Source of the DNA: Octopus bimaculoides
Lineage: Eukaryota
Direction: 5' to 3'
DNA: 44,831 bases
Assembly: GCF_001194135.2 (NCBI RefSeq)
Contig: NC_068993.1
Coordinates: 6,363,574 to 6,408,404 of the forward strand
In this document: positions 932-43,530 of the stretch, in pieces
Layout of the letters: each line of letters starts with the position of its first letter
Numbering within the stretch: position 1 is the stretch's first letter
Notes under the pieces: model-generated
Seen by the model: only the letters and a program-made list of their open reading frames with translations
Databases searched by the model: none
What the model was told of the DNA's origin: nothing
Position numbers and translations under genes: made by a program

Positions 932-1281
932 GGCGCAGGAGTAGCTGTGTGGTAAGTAGCTTGCTTACCAACCACATGGTTCCGGGTTCATTCCCACTGC
1001 ATAGCACCTTGAGCAAGTGTCTTCTACTATAGCCTCGGGCCGACGAAAGCCTTGTGAGTGGATTTGGTAGACGGAAACTGAAAGAAGCCTGTCGTATATA
1101 TGTATATATATGTATATATGTATGTGTGTGTATATGTCTGTGTGTCTGTGTTTGTTCCCTCAACATCGCTTGACAACCGATGCTGGTGTATTTACGTCCC
1201 CGTAACTTAGCGGTTCGGTAAAAGAGAGCGATAGAATAAGTACTAGGCTTTCAAAGAATAAGTCCTGGGGTCGATTTGCTC
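932..1281 (+). mobile_element. SINE family A, near full-length, cut by N gap
   Basis: ggcgcaggagtagctgtgtggtaag A-box and ggttcattccc B-box, CORE-like gcaccttgagcaagtgtctt, internal (TA/TG)n, then gtcctggggtcgat; about 10 homologues in the window. Confidence 0.9.
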
Positions 1282-3663: not shown

Positions 3664-4429
3664 ATTATCTGGTCATTAAGAATGAAATGTCCGATTTTCT
3701 TATACACTAAGTTTGACAGTCGTTAACTCTAATGTTTTATCCTGACAATTCTTTGTTTTACAACATTGAAGAGTTACATCATCACTTTTCGAAATTCATA
3801 GTGTCTGATTATATTGTGAGTTTTCTGTTGAAAATCAATTTTTGTGAACCCATGGATAGATAAAAAATTCGTGTTGTTTCTGAATATGAGATCCGTCGTG
3901 GAACCAATGCATCTCAGAACCATCAATGAGGTGTTTGGTAAAGATGTGGTGAATGAGCGCATTGGACGTCAATATTTTGAGACGTTCCGGTTTGGTGACT
4001 TTACTCTTGAAAATCAGTCCCGTGATTGACCTGAGACCAAGGTGGATAATGATAAGCTGGAAACTGTCGAGGAAACGGATACATCTCAAATTACGCGTGA
4101 GTTAGCTGCAAAGTTTGATGCTTCGATTCCAACTGTATTGGACCATTTGAAACAAGGTAAAGAAGCTGGGCAAGTGGGTATCACACAAACTGAACGAGCA
4201 TCAGATGACACGTCGTTCTTCGCTGTTCTTTGCTGTCACAGCATAAAAGCGAACCATTTTTGCATCGTATTGTTACAAGTGATGAAAAATGGATAATTTT
4301 TAACAATAGCAAGCGTTCTGCACGGTGGTTGGACAGAAACCACGTTCCAAAACACAATCCCAAAAAGAATATTAACTAAAAAGTTAATGGCGTCAGGTGG
4401 TCCAGCGCTGGTGTCATCCACTACAGCTT
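3664..4429 (+). mobile_element. Mariner DNA transposon fossil, 5' half
   Basis: TIR-like tatctggtcattaagaatgaaatgtccgatttt near 3664-3698, followed by a decayed transposase; truncated at a (TA)n tract with no 3' TIR seen. Confidence 0.85.
3852..4429 (+). pseudogene. Mariner transposase pseudogene (N-terminal HTH to first catalytic Asp), with frameshifts and stops
   Basis: Translated segments TINEVFGKDVVNER, FRFGDFTLENQSRD*PETKVDNDKL, TRELAAKFDASIPTVLDHLKQ, KKLGKWVSHKL (WVPHEL motif), EPFLHRIVTSDEKWI (TGDEKW motif) and AGVIHYS; typical of Hsmar1/cecropia-type mariners. Confidence 0.9.
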
Positions 4430-4982: not shown

Positions 4983-5200
4983 CAGTTCCATGAGTCAAAG
5001 TGTGATGATTAATCATGGATGTCTTCTAGGCAAATTCATTTTTGTCATTTCTGCGAGACGAGTATTTCTTGGTTATTTGCTTGTATACATGTGTTAGCTT
5101 GTTATGGACGCAAAGCGACAAAAGTCTGTATATATGTATATATGCATATATGTATGTATATATATTTATCTATATCTATCTATACATACATATACATATA

Positions 5201-5416
5201 TGTGAATTGGTAGACGGAAACAGAAAGAAGCCTGTCATATGTACATATGTGTAAGCATGTTCCTACCACCATTGGACAACTGACTCTGTAAAAGAAACCA
5301 GTAGAACGGGTACCTTGCTTTGAAAATAAGAACTGAGCTTGCTTCATTCGACTGAAATTCTTCAAGGCGGTTGCCCCAGTATGGTCGCTGCCCAATGACT
5401 GTAAAAAATGAAAGAT
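5201..5416 (+). mobile_element. SINE family A, degenerate middle and 3' part
   Basis: ggtagacggaaacagaaagaagcctgtc and caaggcggttgccccagtatggtcgc match family A body and tail. Confidence 0.6.
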
Positions 5417-5524
5417 ATTGTATATCATTTCTACGGAGTGGTTTGCTTGGCCTTTTCGTCGTTGATCGACGGCATTGCAGGAACAGTGACTTAAACATCT
5501 CTTCTATGTCTTGCCTGTTTACAG

Positions 5525-5730: not shown

Positions 5731-5853
5731 CCTGATGAAGGCTGGAGGGCATATCAGCAGAAAGGTTGTGTTCACAACAAACAAGATGAGGGCAAATATC
5801 CGTCAAATGTAAATAATGTATAAGATAGATATGTTAAAAAAAGAACTAAGGGA
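5731..5853 (+). mobile_element. SINE family C 3' fragment, unit 1 (starts at hammerhead core)
   Basis: cctgatgaaggctggagggcatatcagcagaaaggttgtgttcacaacaaacaagatgagg... is homologous to the 3' part of 29499-29730 (-). Confidence 0.85.
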
Positions 5854-5982
5854 CCTGATAAAGGTGGAGGGTATATCAGCCGAAAGGTTGTGTTAACAAC
5901 AAACAAGATGAGGACAAATATCTGCCAAATGTAAATAATGTAAACAATGTATAAAATAGATATGTTAAAAAAAGAATTAAGG
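5854..5982 (+). mobile_element. SINE family C 3' fragment, unit 2 (tandem, period 123 nt)
   Basis: cctgataaaggtggagggtatatcagccgaaaggttgtgttaacaacaaacaagatgaggac...; shares the downstream atagatatgttaaaaaaagaa with unit 1. Confidence 0.85.
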
Positions 5983-6755
5983 CAATAATTGGAGATGAAA
6001 GAAAAATAAAGTTCACAGATGCATCTGTCAATCCTTACTACCCCTTTTATGCCCCTATACTTTTTTCCCATATTAACCATTCCATCACTCTCAAGTGATT
6101 GGTACCATTCAATTTGAGATGCAGTTATTCATCCCTGTTCAACACTGAAAATATTGCATGATCACAGCTGAAATAACTTTCATCATAGATTTGCTCCATC
6201 AAGTTTGAATGGAGTTAAATAACAAAACTGGAAAAAGAAAAGGATTCTCTTTGAACCATTACTGTACTCTAGACCGTGTGTTGAGTTTGTTTGTACAGAT
6301 GCGAGTGTGTTTGTATGTATGTATGTATGTATTCACATCCAATAAAGTTAACATGTCTCTGCGTGTATGCGCGTTATATATTATATAAATAATATATTAT
6401 ATATGTACGTGTGCTTGTGGGCGTATATAGTGTGCACGGGTGTTTTATACATTTCCTACACACACACTTATGTATGTATGTGTGAATACATACCTAAGTA
6501 TATATTAAGTATATGTATGCATGCATACTCATATATATATATATATATANNNNNNNNNNNNNNNNNNNNNNNNNNNNNNNNNNNNNNNNNNNNNNNNNNN
6601 NNNNNNNNNNNNNNNNNNNNNNNNNNNNNNNNNNNNNNNNNNNNNNNNNNNNNNNNNNNNNNNNNNNNNNNNNNNNNNNNNNNNNNNNNNNNNNNNNNNN
6701 NNNNNNNNNNNNNNNNNNNNNNNNNNNNNNNNNNNNNNNNNNNNNNNNNNNNNNN

Positions 6756-16365: not shown

Positions 16366-16826
16366 AACATTTTATATACATATATATATATATATATATA
16401 CGTATATATATACATGCATACACGTGTGTGTATATGCAAAATATATATATACACACTTGTGCGTGGGTATACATGTACGTACGTATATATATATATATAC
16501 ACATATATGTGTATATATATATGCAGTGTTTGTATATATGTACGTACACACACACACTAGTGATAGCAAGGGTCGCAGGGGAATATTTTTGTTAACATGA
16601 AGCAAACAACTGTATTCTTAGATTTTTATTCATAACACACACAAGAAACAAATAACATAGACAAGACGCCCTCTGTCGGTGTCATGGCTGTCCCATTTTA
16701 TCAACAAAGGGTTAATGGTAAAATAATTTCCGCTTCTTCTCATGAAAGTCATTTCATTTTTTTTTATTATTATTATTATTCGAGAATGTATATTGAAGAA
16801 TTGACGGCGGCAACTGTGCAGCAGCC

Positions 16827-16995: not shown

Positions 16996-17019
16996 GGTGT
17001 GTGCTTAACCGGTACATAA

Positions 17020-17135
17020 TTTATTTTATCGACCTTGAAAGGTTAAAAAGCAAAGTCGACTGAGGCGGAATTTGAACTTATAATGTGAAACCGGACGAAA
17101 TGACGCTGTACATTTTGTCCGGCACGTGCTACCAA
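17020..17135 (-). mobile_element. SINE family B fragment
   Basis: tttatcgaccttgaaaggttaaaaagcaaagtcgactgaggcggaatttgaact. Confidence 0.75.
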
Positions 17136-21307: not shown

Positions 21308-21338
<31 letters not shown>

Positions 21339-21350
21339 CGTGTGTATGTG

Positions 21351-21392
<42 letters not shown>

Positions 21393-22051
21393 ATGAGCGA
21401 GAATGGGGATTAGATATACGTACATACAGCGATACACTGGGATAGTTCTAATAAAGCAGTTTTGCAGCGAAAATTTTGGCACCTCAAGAAATAATGAAGT
21501 TTTCGCATGTTTTATGTTGGCTAAAATGGCCAGTCTAACTAAGATGTAATTTCCGTTGTTGGAGTCGTACCAAACCGTTCAAATTTTAATATATGTAATG
21601 CTGAAACAAGTACGAAACGGTATCGGCTCAAGTCACCTGATTAACTCCCAAATTCCGTCAGCATCCTTTCATGAATATACCTTCCATATCCCTGTAACTT
21701 CTTATATTTCGATATTTTGTATTGTGGACAATCCGGATTGGATAATATCGTAATGATCTTTTCAGGTAACTTCTGAAGATTTTGGCCACATCTCTGTTGG
21801 TCAAGGTTGACCACCAGACCTCTGCACATGCGTGTTGTAGTGGGGGTAGGCCCAGGCAAGGTTTGGAGGGAAAAAAACTTGCAATTACTCATGCCTGCAT
21901 GGAGTGCACTTTATGTTTGAGGCTCTGAGGAAAGTGCAAGGTGTTGACTAAGGCACTCAGTTATGAGTCAACCACATCTTACAACGGAAACGGCTGTAAG
22001 CTAATGAAGTTCATAAGATAATCATTTATTCCTTTGTCATCTCTTTTCCTA

Positions 22052-28622: not shown

Positions 28623-29498
28623 CACACTGTTATATATGTATATATTTATGTTGAGGTGTCATCATTAACTTATCCACTGTTGTTGTAGCTTAACCGTAAG
28701 TCATCACTGATTGTAGAAAACCAGCAATAAAAGCTAATCCAGACTAAATTACCATGTTCAAACCGTGTGCCATTCCTTTGTGTATGGTTGTGTATCTACA
28801 TTTAAGGATCCAGGGTAATTTGAGGTAGGTTTGGCTGGTGTTTCTAGCAAGTGGAGCGATCGCATACAGTCCCTCTCCGTTATTAGAGAGACAAAGAGAG
28901 AGTAGGCAGGGGGGGCTCGACAGTTTTGCTAATATCCAGATCTGCTGTATTGCTTCTATCAAAGTTTTCCAAGTGAAGATCCCACTGGTGGATAACATAG
29001 GGGTGTAGGTCATTAATGGATTTGATTTTAACAAAACCGTAGTAGTAGTAGTAGTAGTAGTAGTAGTACAAAGAGACAGAATCAAGGTGTTGGAGGATGT
29101 CTTTATTAATGGCAGTTCAATTTCCTTACATTATTGTAAACCTATGTACATTCGACGAAATAGTGTCGTACTTCTATGTCTCCCCTCTAATATTTTGTAT
29201 CATGACGTTTGCAATATTCTTACTTACACTGAAATTTCTGTATTACATTGATTGTCTGAAGTGCATCCTACTGCTTATGTCGTTGTGGTTTCATGTTGAT
29301 GTGAAGTCTTTCATTCGGGTGATTCTGAATATATTCTAATGATTAGTTGGTGATGGGAGCTATAATACATGTTGTGTTCCCTTTTATGAGTTTTGTAACG
29401 ATCTGTCCATCCATTCTACGACTAGAGTATTTTTGCTTTGTCTGGTAAAATCTTTGATATTTTATTTGTAATTGTGTGAGAGAATTTGTTCTTGTATT

Positions 29499-29730
29499 TA
29501 TTTACATTATTTATATTTGACGGGTATTTGTCCTCATCGTGTTTGTTGTTAGCACAACGTTTCGGCTGATATACCCTCCAGCCTTCATCAGGTGTCTTGG
29601 GGAAATTTCGAACCTGGGTTCTCATTCCTAAGGTATTTTTCGATGTTATTATTATTCAGGTCACTGCCTGGAATCGAACTCGGTATCTTGGGGTTAGTAG
29701 CCCGAGCTCTTAACCATTACGTCATATGCC
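29499..29730 (-). mobile_element. SINE family C, full-length: tRNA-like head, body and hammerhead-containing PLE-like tail
   Basis: Reverse complement GGCATATGACGTAATGGTTAAG (A box)...CCGAGTTCGATTCC (B box)...(AAT)n...GACACCTGATGAAGGCTG...CAGCCGAAACGTTGTGC...tail; possible 6-nt TSD tgtatt at 29493-29498 and 29731-29736 (low complexity). Confidence 0.9.
29551..29597 (-). ncRNA. Minimal type I hammerhead ribozyme motif
   Basis: Stem I GACAC/GUGCU (GUGUU in other copies); core CUGAUGA at 29591-29585; extra A; stem II GGCUG/CAGCC; GAAA at 29563-29560; palindromic (A)ACGU(U) stem III; GUU cleavage triplet with predicted cut between 29556 and 29555. Confidence 0.75.
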
Positions 29731-29914
29731 TGTATTGTTCTTGTATTGTTCTAATCTAACCGTTATTAAACAAATCTTTGTTTCACTCTTAATATTTTCT
29801 TATTGAAAGCTTTTTACAGGATGAAAATTTAAAAGCTTGTTAGAAAGGATTTGGCTACAGACGTTTTATGTATCTAAGGAGACTACAGACATTTAATATT
29901 TATAATATATTGTG

Positions 29915-32062: not shown

Positions 32063-32215
32063 AGGTGCAGGTATAGCTGGGTGGTCAGAAGTTTGTTTCC
32101 CGACCACATGATTCCAGATTCAGACCCACAGCCTGGTATCTTGAATTAGGGTCTTCTTCTATAGCACAGGACCGAACAGAGCCTTGTGAATGGATTTGGT
32201 AGACAGAAACTAAAA

Positions 32216-32248
<33 letters not shown>

Positions 32249-32587: not shown

Positions 32588-32800
32588 TTTTCTACTCTAG
32601 GCACAAGGCTCGAAATTTTGGGGGAGGAACCCAGTCGATTAGATCTACCCCAGTACGCAACTGGTACTTAATTTATCGACCCCGAAAGGATGAAAGGCAA
32701 AGTCGACCTCGGCGGAATTTGAACTCAGAACGTAAAGTCAGACGAAATACCGCTAAGCATTTCGCCCGGCGTGCTAACGTTTCTGCCAGCTCACCGCTTT
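32588..32800 (-). mobile_element. SINE family B, full-length, well-preserved, with TSD
   Basis: Reverse complement gcggtgagctggcagaaacgttagc...gttctgagttcaaattcc...; flanked by ttgccgtttataattcc (32571-32587) and tggccggttataattcc (32801-32817), 15/17 identical. Confidence 0.92.
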
Positions 32801-34226: not shown

Positions 34227-34427
34227 TTAAACATATTTGTGTTAAGAGGAGAGAGAGGGAGTATATATGTGTGTATACATATGAAGACCTATACATCGGC
34301 TTTTTAACGAATGTGTATGTATGTATGTATGTATGTGTAAATGTATGCGTATATATATATATGTGTGTGTATATGTATGCGTATATGTGTATGTATATGT
34401 GTATATGCGTATATGTATATGCATAGA

Positions 34428-34861: not shown

Positions 34862-35485
34862 TCGGCGAGCTGGCAGAATCGTTAGCGCGCCGGGCAAAAT
34901 GCTTAGCGATATTTCATCCGTCGTTACGATCTGAGTTCAAATTTCGCCGAGGTCGACTTTACCTTTCATCCTTTCGGGGTCGATAAATTAAGTACTGATT
35001 GAACACTGCGGTTGATGTAATCGACTCATCCCCCTCCTCCAAGTTGCTGCCCTCGTGGCAAAATTTGAAATCATTATTATTATTATTATTATTATTAATT
35101 AAGGCTGCGAGTTGGCAGAATCGTTAGCACTCTGGGCAAAATGCTAAGCGGTATTTCGCCCGTCGCTACGTTCTGAGTTCAAATTCCGCCGAGGTCGACT
35201 TTACCTTTCATCCTTTCGGGGTCGATAGATTAAGTAGCAGTTGAGTACTGAGGATCACTCTGATTGACTCATCCCATTTCCCAAAATGGCTACCTTTGTG
35301 GTAAACTTTGAAATTGTTATTATTATTATTATCTTTACATTCTGAGTTCACATTCCGCTGAGCTAAACTTTGCCTTCCATCCTTTCGAGGTCGATAAAGC
35401 AAGTAGGAACGTAGTGAGGGTGATGTAACTAACCTAATTTACCCCCGAAAATTGATGGCATTATTCCAAAATTATAAAGAATTAC
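34862..35485 (+). mobile_element. Head-to-tail array of three SINE family B copies separated by (ATT)n
   Basis: Copies at 34862-35070, 35102-35315 and 35332-35485 (5'-truncated); (ATT)n at 34824-34855, 35071-35097 and 35316-35331. Confidence 0.9.
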
Positions 35486-36560: not shown

Positions 36561-36739
36561 TTCAAAGTAGTCTCTCTTTCCAAATAAGTTGTTTACCGAG
36601 CATCCACAACATCCCGCGACCCACCTTCATTAGTACTCCGTAGATATACCATTACCTGTCATCTTTCAATAAACATTCTCCGGTTTATTTTAAATGGTAT
36701 ATGCTTCGCGTATTAAGCTCCAACTTTTATCGCACGTGC

Positions 36740-36868
36740 ACGATGGGTTTCTTTCAGTTTCCGTCTATCAAATACACTCACAGAGCTTTGTTAGACCTGA
36801 GACTATAGTAGAAGACATAACCCGGAACCATGCGGTTCGAAAGCAAGCCTCTTATCACACAGCTTGCA
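36740..36868 (-). mobile_element. SINE family A 5' half, internally deleted
   Basis: tttctttcagtttccgtctatcaaatacactcac...aacccggaaccatgcgg. Confidence 0.75.
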
Positions 36869-36923
36869 CTTATATATTGTCCACTTGTGTTCCCTTTTCC
36901 CTTGCTACATACACACTAATTCT

Positions 36924-37163
36924 AGGCAGTGAGTTTGCAGTCGTTAGAGCGTCGCATGGAATTCCTTGCTGTATCAATACCGGCATCCAGCATTCTGAGT
37001 TCAAATACCGTTGACGTTAACTTTACCTTTTTGGTTTTTCGGGATCGATAAAAAAAGAACTACCATTTCAAAGCGGTGTGGTGGTACTGTAATAACTTCG
37101 AACCAGTGCTTTGCAGTATTTGTTCTGGCTCTTTATGTTCTAAGTTCAAATCTCGCAGTGGCC
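36924..37163 (+). mobile_element. Two degenerate tandem SINE family B heads
   Basis: ttctgagttcaaatacc and ttctaagttcaaatctc B-box regions. Confidence 0.55.
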
Positions 37164-41412: not shown

Positions 41413-41684
41413 AAGCCAGTTAACAGCAGCAATCGTTTGCACGTCGGACAAAATGTTTAGCAGTATTTTTTTCTGGTTCTTTATACTAGTTCAAACGCCA
41501 CTGAGGGCGATTTAGCTTTCCATCCTTTTGGGGTCAATAAAATAAAATACCAATTGAGTAATGAGGGCGGTGTAAATAATTAATTTCTCCCCACCCCCTA
41601 AAATTACTGACCTTGTGGCAAAATTTGAAGCCATTAAGCTGGTTTGCTGGCAGAATCGTTAGCACGCCGGACAAAATGCTTCGC
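41413..41684 (+). mobile_element. SINE family B copy followed by a second family B head interrupted at 41684
   Basis: tagctttccatccttttggggtcaataaa...ccttgtggcaaaatttgaa, then gctggcagaatcgttagcacgccggacaaaatgc. Confidence 0.75.
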
Positions 41685-41842
41685 TATTTTTCGATGTTGT
41701 TGTTATTATTATTCAAATCACTGCCTGGAATCGAACTCGGGCATGTGGCGTAGTGGTTAAGAGTGAGGGCTACTAACCCCAAGATTCCGAGTTCGATTCC
41801 AGGCAGTGACTTGAATAATAATAATAATAACATCGAAAAATA
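41685..41842. repeat. 56-bp inverted repeat (arms 41685-41740 and 41787-41842)
   Basis: The left arm is the reverse complement of the B-box/(AAT)n segment of the adjacent SINE C; 53/56 identical by manual alignment. Confidence 0.95.
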
Positions 41843-41927
41843 CCTTATGAATGAGGTATTCGAAATATCCCCCAAGACACCTTATGAAGGCTGGAGGGTA
41901 TATCAGCCAAAACGTTGTGTTAACAAC
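41740..41927 (+). mobile_element. SINE family C with mutated hammerhead core and short 3' end
   Basis: ggcatgtggcgtagtggttaag (A box), ccgagttcgattcc (B box), gacacCTTATGAaggctggagggtatatcagccAAAAcgttgtgttaacaac. Confidence 0.9.
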
Positions 41928-43530
41928 ACCACAACAATAACAACGTAATTGATCAGAAAATCATAATTGATTTATAATTTAGACCCAGGGGCCAGCTATT
42001 TTAGGAGAGTAGGGGTTAATCGATACCAGCGATACCAATTCCTTGCTGGAACTTAATTTTATCGACTTTGAAAGGGAAAAAAAAGCAAATNNNNNNNNNN
42101 NNNNNNNNNNNNNNNNNNNNNNNNNNNNNNNNNNNNNNNNNNNNNNNNNNNNNNNNNNNNNNNNNNNNNNNNNNNNNNNNNNNNNNNNNNNNNNNNNNNN
42201 NNNNNNNNNNNNNNNNNNNNNNNNNNNNNNNNNNNNNNNNNNNNNNNNNNNNNNNNNNNNNNNNNNNNNNNNNNNNNNNNNNNNNNNNNNNNNNNNNNNN
42301 NNNNNNNNNNNNNNNNNNNNNNNNNNNNNNNNNNNNNNNNNNNNNNNNNNNNNNNNNNNNNNNNNNNNNNNNNNNNNNNNNNNNNNNNNNNNNNNNNNNN
42401 NNNNNNNNNNNNNNNNNNNNNNNNNNNNNNNNNNNNNNNNNNNNNNNNNNNNNNNNNNNNNNNNNNNNNNNNNNNNNNNNNNNNNNNNNNNNNNNNNNNN
42501 NNNNNNNNNNNNNNNNNNNNNNNNNNNNNNNNNNNNNNNNNNNNNNNNNNNNNNNNNNNNNNNNNNNNNNNNNGTACGTGTGTGTATATGTGTACGTGTG
42601 TGTATATGTGTGTGTGTATATATATGTGTGTGTGTGTATGCGTGTTTGTGCATATTCTTGTGTGTGTGTGTACATTTGTATATGCGTGCATACATATATA
42701 TGCTTATGTGTGCATACATAATATGTATGCTAATATGTAGGTGTGCGTGCGTATATATGATTATGAGCGTGCGTTTGCACATGCATGTGCGTGCATGTAT
42801 ATTTGTATGCTAGTGTGTGTGTGTGTGTGTGTTTGAATGTGCATATTTGCTTGTGTGTGTGTGTGTGTGTGTGATTGTGTGTGCACGCAAATATCGTGCT
42901 GTGTTTGCGTTACCGAGCTTCAGTTTCGTAGCAGCTCTTTACTTTTGTGTTCTCCAATTTATCAAAGTGACGGACGCGACTGGTGTGAAGTCACCTGATC
43001 AAAGGAGGTTCCGTTGTCGAGGTGCACCAAAACTGACAGCTCCTTTCATCATTCTTTAAAGTGCAGCCATTGATGTTCAAAGCTCCTTCTGAATGCACCA
43101 ACAATTTCAGAAATTATTTGACAGAGGATACTTACAAACGTATTTCTCTCCACCCTGTCTTTCTCGTATTTGTGAGTGTGTGTGTGTCTGTCTGTCTGTA
43201 TGTATGTATGCATGTATGTGTGTGTGTATGTAGCAATCGCATTGCTATCATACACAACGATTAATGTACCAACAAATCGATTGTTAAATAACCTCGGATT
43301 TACATTTTGTATAGATTTCCCGATGTATTTAACCTATACAGTATCTTATATTACTCGCTTGATATTCGAATATCCAGGTTCACACGCTGCACACGTTCCT
43401 TCCAAGCACTGCTGTAAACAGCAGACGTGAGCTAGAACGTTGAAACTTTGTGCGCATGCACAACAGAGTTCCAGGTCAATCTGTGCCAACCGGCTTTACT
43501 CTGCGTGCTTTAGCATTGCTACTATGGCAA

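What the first reader, a model, noticed from the sequence alone, without database searches (positions are those of the whole stretch)
29499..29730. tRNA-headed SINE whose 3' end is a Penelope-type hammerhead ribozyme: candidate PLE-mobilised 'ribozyme SINE'
Seen: on the minus strand a Pol III A/B-box tRNA-like head is followed by AAGACAC-CUGAUGA-A-GGCUG(GAGGGUAUAU)CAGCC-GAAA-CGUU-GUGCU, containing all hammerhead core nucleotides in type I order. The same tail recurs at 5731, 5854 and 41874-41927. Established: PLEs carry minimal hammerheads in their 3'/pLTR regions, and SINE tails usually derive from the 3' end of the partner autonomous element (normally a LINE). Inference: this SINE took a PLE 3' end and is retroposed by PLE RT/GIY-YIG machinery. 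I do not know of a described Pol III SINE with a PLE-hammerhead tail, but cannot check the literature or Repbase/Dfam here; the family itself may already be named, for example among the octopus OR SINEs.
Basis: partly seen in the sequence, partly recalled or inferred. Interest (0 to 1): 0.9.

Follow-up and report, generated by a model that had tools for sequence, protein, structure and literature searches.

The report
Octopus SINE carrying Penelope-type hammerhead
A short octopus "jumping" DNA element has a tRNA-like promoter at its front and, near its tail, a complete minimal hammerhead ribozyme of the kind so far typical of Penelope-like retrotransposons. This suggests, but does not prove, that it is copied by Penelope enzymes rather than by the usual LINE partner.

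Summary
Window 29730-29499 (minus strand) is one complete insertion flanked by a perfect 13-bp target-site duplication. It has Pol III A and B boxes at tRNA spacing, a short body, a type-I hammerhead and a 52-nt AT-rich end. The hammerhead reads CUGAUGA, bulged A, 6-bp helix II closed by G10.1-C11.1, GAAA, palindromic ACGU and U17. A full descriptor of this motif gave 0 hits in 742 Mb of composition-matched random sequence. Each non-core feature matches the published description of the minimal hammerheads of Penelope-like elements (PLEs). Rfam hammerhead and tRNA models and ARAGORN do not detect it.

The majority sequence keeps the core. An Octopus bimaculoides predicted protein is a translated copy of the same element.

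PLE mobilisation is plausible but untested. The supporting points are the ribozyme type, a head-less tail module in head-to-tail tandem, an inverted fragment at one copy's 5' end, and reported recent PLE activity in Octopus vulgaris. No PLE coding sequence is in the window and no octopus PLE 3' end could be fetched.

Hammerhead-bearing SINE-like elements (schistosome SM-alpha) and PLE-dependent retrozymes are already known. I rate this a new variant of a known kind.

The parts
29735..29747 (-). 5' copy of the target-site duplication AATACAAGAACAA
   Evidence: Perfect 13-bp direct repeat with 29486-29498. It brackets the whole element.
29731..29734 (-). Four extra bases (TACA) between the TSD and the SINE 5' end
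   Evidence: Read from the sequence. They are absent at the 5' end of the 41740 copy. Origin unknown; untemplated 5' addition is an inference.
29659..29730 (-). tRNA-related head with Pol III A box (29724-29714, TGACGTAATGG) and B box (29682-29671, GAGTTCGATTCC)
   Evidence: Relaxed A/B-box pattern at tRNA spacing. The homologous head at 41740 fits the strict consensus. No tRNA call by Rfam or ARAGORN.
29597..29658 (-). SINE body: (AAT)n stretch, ATCGAAAAATACCTTAGGAATGAG, and a second GGTTCGAAAT motif
   Evidence: Shared with the 41740 copy apart from small indels. Translated in O. bimaculoides protein P0001.
29551..29596 (-). Type-I minimal hammerhead: helix I GACAC/GUGCU (3 bp here, 5 bp in the majority sequence GUGUU), CUGAUGA, bulged A, 6-bp helix II, GAAA, palindromic ACGU. 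Predicted cleavage after U17, between 29556 and 29555.
   Evidence: Features match the PLE min-HHR description. Cleavage is predicted, not shown.
29499..29550 (-). AT-rich 3' tail (AACAACAAACACGATGAGGACAAATACCCGTCAAATATAAATAATGTAAATAA)
   Evidence: 90% identical to the tail-only units at 5731 and 5853. It ends at the TSD.
29486..29498 (-). 3' copy of the target-site duplication
41740..41928 (+). Second SINE copy: intact strict A/B boxes, body, and a hammerhead with two core mutations (CUUAUGA, AAAA). Homology ends 13 nt past the cleavage site, in a (CAA)n-like run. No TSD found.
41685..41740 (-). Inverted, 5'-truncated fragment of the same SINE (second half of the head plus the AAT run), abutting the 5' end of the 41740 copy
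   Evidence: It forms a roughly 50-bp hairpin that Rfam mis-scores as MIR1222. The boundary with a neighbouring family-B SINE head shows about 9 nt of microhomology.
5731..5852 (+). Tail-only unit A: begins at CCUGAUGA, has no tRNA head, and runs about 35 nt beyond the 29499 SINE end (TAAGATAGATATGTTAAAAAAAGAACTAAGG)
   Evidence: Core intact, but C11.1 is changed to A and the palindrome is broken (GGUU).
5853..5985 (+). Tail-only unit B, head-to-tail with unit A. Same start and same 3' extension. Core mutated (CUGAUAA).
   Evidence: Units are 85% identical counting gaps. No TSD of 7 bp or more. The upstream 330 bp is unique in the window and has no Pfam hit.

Best explanation
This is a copy of a tRNA-derived, Pol III-promoted SINE family of octopus. 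Its 3' module, about 100 nt, was taken from a hammerhead-bearing retroelement of the Penelope-like (PLE) or retrozyme lineage.

Proposed mechanism, with the status of each step:
1. Pol III starts from the internal A and B boxes and reads through the body, hammerhead and tail to a T-run in the flank. The boxes are shown; transcription is inferred.
2. The 3' module mimics the 3' end (pseudo-LTR part) of a partner PLE RNA. PLE RT/GIY-YIG copies it by target-primed reverse transcription and leaves a variable-length TSD, 13 bp here. The TSD is shown; the partner is inferred.
3. The hammerhead is the minimal, helix-III-less type. It can be completed only by pairing the ACGU palindromes of two copies. 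On a lone SINE RNA it should therefore be largely silent, which keeps the promoter head joined to the 3' priming region. I infer that it is retained as part of the structure the RT recognises, and that it could cleave where copies lie in tandem.
For: - Single-insertion anatomy with a perfect 13-bp TSD.
- Pol III A and B boxes at tRNA spacing in both full copies. The strict consensus gave 0 hits in 20 Mb of random sequence.
- Complete hammerhead core in type-I order. It also has the features reported as characteristic of PLE minimal hammerheads: an extra nucleotide between A9 and G10.1, a G10.1-C11.1 closing pair, a long (6-bp) helix II, a short (4-5 bp) helix I, and a palindromic 15.2-16.2 with no loop 3.
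- The full descriptor gave 0 hits in 742 Mb of random sequence.
- The majority sequence of four copies keeps the core and gives a 5-bp helix I.
- The same composite exists in Octopus bimaculoides.
- The tail module also occurs without the tRNA head, as a head-to-tail pair with its own longer 3' end. This fits a module borrowed from a separate element.
- Head-to-tail tandems, inverted 5'-truncated copies abutting the 5' end, and 30-40-bp end extensions are described hallmarks of PLE insertions. The first two are seen here, and the 35-nt extension may be the third.
- O. vulgaris is reported to have 30 recently active Penelope families and 11.6% SINEs, mostly unclassified.
- No hammerhead has been reported in a LINE 3' end. 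The LINE-associated ribozymes described are HDV-like or twister motifs at or near 5' ends.
Against: - No sequence identity to a PLE 3' end was shown.
- No RT or GIY-YIG remnant lies next to any copy.
- The region upstream of the tail-only tandem is unique sequence.
- A 13-bp TSD and an AT-rich terminus fit LINE-mediated TPRT equally well.
- The inverted fragment could come from LINE twin priming.
- Only three independent copies were available, so no covariation test was possible.
- Rfam hammerhead models do not score the motif.
- Predicted folding is no more stable than shuffles: z = -1.6 for the SINE and -1.0 for the ribozyme.
- The tandem units carry GGUU, which breaks the dimerisation palindrome.
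- Published PLE minimal hammerheads cleave only weakly in vitro.
Confidence: 0.55

Rival explanations
1. LINE-mobilised SINE with a passenger ribozyme. The family is moved by an ordinary octopus LINE (RTE, CR1, Dong-R4 or L1-Tx1) that recognises the last roughly 50 AT-rich nucleotides. The hammerhead segment is an internal module captured from a PLE or retrozyme, with no role in mobility.
For: - A simple insertion with a 13-bp TSD and an AT-rich end (...AAATATAAATAATGTAAATAA) looks like a stringent-type LINE/SINE terminus.
- LINEs are the most abundant and most recently active octopus retroelements.
- SINE modules are known to be shuffled. A neighbouring SINE family in the window has a different head and tail.
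- The 41740 copy ends in a (CAA)n-like run just after the ribozyme.
Against: - The tail downstream of the ribozyme travels with the ribozyme in the head-less tandem units, so ribozyme and terminus belong to one donor module.
- That donor forms head-to-tail tandems, which is unusual for LINE products and typical of PLEs and retrozymes.
- No LINE fragment in the window shares the tail.
Confidence: 0.25
2. Retrozyme-type route. The hammerhead unit of about 122 nt is a small non-LTR retrozyme that spreads through self-cleaved, circularised RNA. The SINE is a secondary fusion of a tRNA promoter to one such unit, which supplies the promoter that retrozymes lack.
For: - Two head-to-tail units with the same start and end, each with a type-I hammerhead remnant.
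- Animal retrozymes are tandem type-I hammerhead repeats reported to lack promoters and to depend on PLEs.
Against: - Only two units are present, both with damaged ribozymes and a broken palindrome.
- Unit boundaries do not coincide with the cleavage site.
- 122 nt is below the 150-300 nt reported for animal retrozymes, which usually carry canonical rather than minimal hammerheads.
- The dispersed copy with a TSD shows ordinary linear-template insertion.
Confidence: 0.12
3. Chance or decayed resemblance. The hammerhead-like string is a fortuitous feature of a SINE body with no ribozyme ancestry or activity.
For: - Rfam hammerhead models give no hit even at E<=10.
- Folding energies are unremarkable.
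- Three of the four copies have core mutations.
- The finding comes from a scan of many windows, so rare chance motifs will be met.
Against: - The full descriptor gave 0 hits in 742 Mb of random sequence.
- The motif shows every extra feature of PLE minimal hammerheads beyond the core boxes.
- Mutated cores in old copies are what neutral decay predicts, and the majority sequence is intact.
Confidence: 0.05
4. Nested insertions, not a family. A PLE tail fragment happened to land next to an unrelated tRNA-derived SINE.
For: The window is crowded with nested SINEs.
Against: - Two copies share identical head-body-ribozyme junctions.
- One TSD encloses the whole unit.
- An O. bimaculoides protein spans body, ribozyme and tail.
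Confidence: 0.03

Closest known systems
SM-alpha / Sj-alpha SINE-like retroposons of Schistosoma (Ferbeyre et al. 1998; Laha et al. 2000, as summarised)
   Same: A short non-coding retroposon that combines a Pol III promoter with a type-I hammerhead having a very short helix III.
   Different: - The schistosome elements carry a canonical hammerhead that cleaves multimeric transcripts, and they are often tandem or satellite-like.
- The octopus element has the PLE-type minimal hammerhead (bulged nucleotide, no loop 3).
- Its best copy is a dispersed single insertion with a TSD.
- It comes from a mollusc.
- Sequence homology was not tested.
[quoted passage not shown] 2017)
   Same: The ribozyme architecture matches point for point: extra nucleotide after A9, G10.1-C11.1, 6-bp helix II, 4-5-bp helix I, and a palindromic A-C-G-U in place of helix III.
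   Different: - Here the motif sits behind a tRNA-like Pol III head in a 232-bp element, not in the pseudo-LTR of a 3-kb element encoding RT and GIY-YIG.
- Thousands of 'dispersed' minimal hammerheads were attributed to truncated PLEs. A SINE carrier was not proposed in the papers I could read.
Metazoan non-LTR retrozymes (Cervera & de la Pena 2020; Li et al. 2026 preprint)
   Same: Non-autonomous, type-I hammerhead, thought to depend on PLEs. The tail-only tandem at 5731-5985 resembles a two-unit array.
   Different: Retrozymes are tandem arrays of 150-300-bp units. They are reported to have no promoter of their own and to spread via circular RNA. This element has its own Pol III promoter and inserts as a single linear copy.
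Classical tRNA-derived SINEs with LINE-derived tails
   Same: Head, body and tail layout, A and B boxes, TSD, and many dispersed copies.
   Different: - The tail module carries a PLE-type ribozyme rather than a recognisable LINE 3' end.
- Identity with OR1, OR2 or OK could not be checked, because no sequences were available in the tools.

Membership tests
Hammerhead ribozyme, type I | Conserved core CUGANGA ... GAAA in the order helix I strand, core, helix II hairpin, GAA, helix III, H17, helix I strand | tested here: met
   29596-29551 (-): GACAC-CUGAUGA-A-GGCUGG(AGGGUAUA)UCAGCC-GAAA-CG-U-U|GUGCU.
Hammerhead ribozyme, type I | Score above threshold with the curated covariance models (Rfam Hammerhead_1 and relatives) | tested here: not met
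   No hammerhead hit at gathering score, or at E<=10 on a 251-nt stretch. These models expect a helix III, which minimal variants lack.
Hammerhead ribozyme, type I | Mg2+-dependent self-cleavage 3' of H17 | not testable with these tools
   Predicted site is 29556/29555. Needs in vitro transcription of monomer and dimer RNA.
PLE-type minimal hammerhead (Cervera & de la Pena 2014) | Unpaired nucleotide between A9 and G10.1, and a G10.1-C11.1 pair | tested here: met
   A at 29584; G at 29583 pairs with C at 29564. Criteria.
PLE-type minimal hammerhead (Cervera & de la Pena 2014) | No helix III or loop 3; palindromic 15.2-16.2 so that two copies form helix III | tested here: met
   The A15.1-C-G-U16.1 (ACGU) palindrome is present in the 29591 and 41881 copies. 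It is GGUU in the two tandem units.
PLE-type minimal hammerhead (Cervera & de la Pena 2014) | Long helix II (6-8 bp) and short helix I (4-5 bp) | tested here: met
   Helix II is 6 bp. Helix I is 3 bp in this copy and 5 bp (GACAC/GUGUU) in the majority sequence.
PLE-type minimal hammerhead (Cervera & de la Pena 2014) | Location in the pseudo-LTR of an element encoding RT and GIY-YIG | tested here: not met
   No RT or GIY-YIG motif anywhere in the window, and no Pfam hit upstream of the tail-only units. Octopus PLE DNA could not be fetched.
tRNA-derived SINE (SINE2) | Internal Pol III A and B boxes at tRNA spacing at the 5' end | tested here: met
   Strict consensus at 41746 (+) and relaxed consensus at 29724 (-). 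Random expectations are 0 per 20 Mb and 0.07 per window.
tRNA-derived SINE (SINE2) | Recognisable similarity of the head to a tRNA | tested here: inconclusive
   No Rfam tRNA hit at E<=10 and no ARAGORN call on the sense strand. The resemblance to tRNA-Arg or tRNA-Thr that I recalled from memory is only a lead.
tRNA-derived SINE (SINE2) | Short, non-coding, dispersed copies flanked by TSDs | tested here: met
   232 bp with a 13-bp TSD. Second copy 12 kb away. Copy in O. bimaculoides. No TSD found for the second copy.
tRNA-derived SINE (SINE2) | 3' tail homologous to the 3' end of the autonomous partner | not testable with these tools
   Needs the octopus PLE and LINE consensus libraries.
Non-LTR retrozyme | Tandem array in which every unit carries an intact type-I hammerhead; expressed as circular RNA | tested here: inconclusive
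   Two head-to-tail units at 5731-5985, both with damaged ribozymes. Circular RNA cannot be tested here.

The most novel reading that the evidence does not exclude
Octopus has a true Pol III SINE whose autonomous partner is a Penelope-like element. That would be the first SINE-PLE partnership of the classical head/tail kind. Such SINEs, rather than truncated PLEs, would account for many of the thousands of 'orphan' minimal hammerheads scattered through animal genomes. The hammerhead fold would be kept because the PLE reverse transcriptase recognises it, not because it cleaves.
Probability: 0.35. Interest if true: 0.75.

Novelty: new variant of a known kind. Interest (0 to 1): 0.55.

Why it matters
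The way PLEs choose and prime their RNA template, and the role of their universally conserved but barely active hammerheads, are open questions. A 230-nt SINE that borrows only the PLE 3' module would be a natural minimal substrate. It would mark out the sequence that suffices for PLE-mediated retrotransposition.

It would also allow ribozyme catalysis to be separated from ribozyme structure, by comparing core point mutants with helix-compensating mutants. In a SINE, cleavage would cut the promoter head away from the priming tail, so selection on catalysis and selection on structure pull in opposite directions.

It could also change how dispersed minimal hammerheads and the 'unclassified SINEs' are annotated. 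The latter make up most of the 11.6% SINE fraction of octopus genomes.

Tried and rejected
1. Rfam at gathering score on the whole window, and at E<=10 on the whole window and on two short stretches. There was no hammerhead or tRNA hit. The hits were microsatellite-driven miRNA models and a MIR1222 artefact caused by an inverted SINE pair.
2. ARAGORN, default and relaxed. The only relaxed call lies on the wrong strand, and I rejected it.
3. Exact-pattern scans of metagenome, viral and prokaryotic genome collections for the ribozyme, to obtain more copies. These gave nothing, or one unrelated 19-mer chance match, L001.
4. Searching the translated sense frame of the SINE against the protein collection to harvest more copies. 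There was one hit, O. bimaculoides A0A0L8FV75. It has no contig on record, so no further DNA was obtained.
5. Looking for PLE coding remnants, by regular expressions for YxDD, GIY...YIG, YIGxT, DKG and RPI in six frames, and by Pfam on the frames upstream and downstream of the tail-only tandem. Nothing was found.
6. BLAST of the tandem's flanks within the window. The 330 bp upstream is unique, so it is flank and not part of the element.
7. MFE and co-fold predictions. Helix II is predicted, but energies are not better than shuffles, and the dimer prediction is dominated by trivial strand swapping. These are uninformative for a tertiary-structure ribozyme.
8. Full-text search for 19-21-mers of the element in 8.3 million papers. 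No hits.
I dropped this because my recall of the sequence is unreliable, and because the absence of SINE-derived peptides suggests that octopus assemblies are not indexed.
10. Lunse et al. 2017 and Ferbeyre et al. 1998 are not held in the library. Their content is cited only through reviews.

Full report
**What is there.** On the minus strand, 29730-29499 reads as one retroposed unit. A perfect 13-bp direct repeat, AATACAAGAACAA, lies at 29747-29735 and 29498-29486. Four extra bases (TACA) sit between the upstream repeat and the element. The element has four parts:
- a 72-nt head, GGCATATGACGTAATGGTTAAGAGC...GAGTTCGATTCCAGGCAGTGACC
- a short body with an (AAT)n run
- a hammerhead motif
- a 52-nt AT-rich end

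The window is AT-rich, full of microsatellites, N gaps and other SINEs, and comes from an octopus. The sense-frame translation of the body, ribozyme and tail is 81% identical to the Octopus bimaculoides predicted protein A0A0L8FV75, which is plainly a translated copy of the same repeat.

**The hammerhead.** The sequence is GACAC-CUGAUGA-A-GGCUGG(AGGGUAUA)UCAGCC-GAAA-C-G-U-U|GUGCU.
- All core nucleotides are present in type-I order.
- Helix II has 6 bp and is closed by G10.1-C11.1.
- One unpaired A follows A9.
- Helix III is reduced to A15.1, C15.2, G16.2 and U16.1. This is the palindrome ACGU, which can pair with a second copy.
- U17 is the cleavage-site nucleotide, so cleavage would fall between 29556 and 29555.
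- Helix I is 3 bp in this copy and 5 bp (GACAC/GUGUU) in the majority sequence of the four copies.

It is the only intact motif of this kind in the window. A strict descriptor is expected 0.007 times per window. The full descriptor gave no hit in 742 Mb of first-order Markov sequence of the same composition, scanned on both strands. That puts chance below about 2 in 10,000 per window.

Cervera and de la Pena (2014) list features that emerged in PLE minimal hammerheads without being part of their search descriptor:
- a conserved G10.1-C11.1 pair
- a palindromic 15.2-16.2
- a larger helix II
- a short helix I of 4-5 bp

All of these are present here. The curated Rfam hammerhead models do not score the motif even at E<=10 on a 251-nt stretch. 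I attribute this to the missing helix III, but it remains a failed formal test. Thermodynamic folding predicts helix II but is no better than shuffles. Cleavage is therefore predicted, not shown. Published PLE minimal hammerheads cleave only weakly, and only as dimers.

**The head.** The copy at 41740 carries TGGCGTAGTGG, a 33-nt spacer, then GAGTTCGATTCC. This fits the strict Pol III type-2 consensus, which gave no hit in 20 Mb of random sequence. The copy at 29724 has two G-to-A changes in the A box and fits only a relaxed consensus. Neither copy is called a tRNA by ARAGORN or by the Rfam tRNA model. The head is therefore a tRNA-related promoter and not a foldable tRNA, as is common in SINEs. 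No TTTT lies inside the element on the sense strand. The first T-run is about 50 nt downstream, as expected for a SINE that uses flanking terminators.

**Other copies.**
- 41740-41928 (+) is 85.6% identical from the first base of the head to 13 nt beyond the cleavage site. There it ends in a (CAA)n-like run. Its ribozyme has two core mutations, G5 to U and G12 to A.
- An inverted fragment of the same SINE directly abuts its 5' end at 41685-41740. The fragment covers the second half of the head plus the AAT run. It forms a hairpin of about 50 bp with the full copy, which Rfam mis-scores as MIR1222.
- At 5731-5852 and 5853-about 5985 (+), two head-to-tail units contain only the ribozyme and tail. 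Both begin at the same base, CCUGAUGA. Both run about 35 nt beyond the 3' end of the 29499 copy (...TAAGATAGATATGTTAAAAAAAGAAYTAAGG).
- The two units are 85% identical to each other counting gaps. They share a C15.2-to-G change that breaks the palindrome, and each has one further damaging change.
- No TSD of 7 bp or more was found for the tandem or for the 41740 copy.
- The 330 bp upstream of the tandem is unique in the window and has no Pfam hit in any forward frame.

The ribozyme-plus-tail module therefore exists on its own, with its own ends, and forms tandems. The SINE carries a slightly shorter version of it behind a Pol III head.

**Interpretation.** The composite is a family. It shows the same junctions in two copies, one TSD around the whole unit, and a copy in O. 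bimaculoides. It is not a chance nesting.

The source of the tail module is most likely the PLE/retrozyme lineage, for four reasons:
- The ribozyme is of the type so far described in PLE pseudo-LTRs and Terminons.
- The module forms a head-to-tail pair, and one SINE copy has an inverted 5'-truncated partner at its 5' end. Both are listed hallmarks of PLE insertions, along with 30-40-bp end extensions.
- O. vulgaris is reported to have 30 recently active Penelope families and a very large, mostly unclassified SINE fraction.
- The ribozymes reported in LINEs are HDV-like or twister motifs at or near 5' ends, not hammerheads in 3' ends.

None of this is direct. No RT or GIY-YIG remnant is in the window, and I could not obtain any octopus PLE 3' end to align. 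A 13-bp TSD, an AT-rich terminus and even the inverted fragment (through twin priming) are compatible with a LINE partner. I put PLE mobilisation at roughly 0.55. The main rival, at about 0.25, is a LINE partner with the ribozyme as a passenger module.

**A mechanistic point that follows from the anatomy (inference).** The cleavage site lies between the promoter head and the last 57 nt, where reverse transcription must begin. Efficient self-cleavage would therefore destroy the SINE template. A ribozyme that is silent as a monomer and needs a second copy to build helix III is the only kind such an element could tolerate. If the core proves conserved across the family, that would argue it is kept as an RT-recognition structure rather than for cleavage. 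This makes the element a useful natural experiment on the unexplained function of PLE hammerheads.

**Comparison with what is known.**
- The SM-alpha and Sj-alpha elements of schistosomes are SINE-like, Pol III-transcribed and hammerhead-bearing.
- Animal non-LTR retrozymes carry type-I hammerheads and have been argued, most recently on phylogenetic grounds, to be non-autonomous PLE derivatives.
- Non-autonomous PLE derivatives sharing 3' ends with autonomous families are described for Chlamys elements.
- The idea of a hammerhead-bearing non-autonomous element dependent on PLEs is therefore not new.

What differs here:
- the combination of a classical dispersed tRNA-headed SINE, with a TSD, and the minimal PLE-type ribozyme
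- the host, a cephalopod
- retrozymes are explicitly described as lacking promoters, whereas this element has one

I found no description of such an element in the searchable literature. Repbase, Dfam and SINEBase could not be consulted, and two key papers were not held.

**Verdict.** I rate it a new variant of a known kind, of moderate interest.

Noticed in passing
window 34869-35076, 35100-35320, 41426-41636 (+); 17017-17129 and 32743-32799 (-): A second, more abundant SINE family with a different head (GCTGGCAGAATCGTTAGC...; B box GAGTTCAAATT) and (ATT)n tails. One truncated head of it (41640-41693) abuts the inverted fragment of the hammerhead SINE, with about 9 nt of microhomology.
   Followed up: partly
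window 41679-41848: Rfam scores this stretch as the plant miRNA MIR1222 (52 bits, E=1.4e-10, below the gathering score of 90). It is simply the long hairpin made by two inverted SINE pieces, so the hit is an artefact.
   Followed up: yes
window 3832-4376 (+): Frame-shifted remnant of a mariner/Mos1-type transposase. HTH_48 has E=9.5e-4 and Transposase_1 has E=0.026, both below Pfam cut-offs.
   Followed up: partly
window about 33891-33839 (-): A third tRNA-like A/B-box head (TGACTTAGTGG...GAGTTCGATTC), unrelated in sequence to the hammerhead SINE. It is probably yet another SINE family.
   Followed up: no
window 968-1159, 5183-5503, 32088-32246 (-); 36694-37011 (+): Another repeat family, recognisable by the recurring translated string LLSVSVYQIHSQ. 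One copy lies just upstream of the tail-only tandem.
   Followed up: no
whole window, e.g. 21324-21393, 34353-34423, 16381-16553: Dozens of (TA)n, (TG)n and (TATG)n microsatellites score as mir-297, mir-3149, mir-466 or mir-1277 precursors below gathering thresholds. These are low-complexity false positives. The window also has 17 N gaps totalling 5,253 N.
   Followed up: yes
window 29731-29734 (-): Four bases (TACA) lie between the upstream TSD copy and the first base of the SINE. They are absent from the other copy. They may be untemplated addition at the 5' junction.
   Followed up: no
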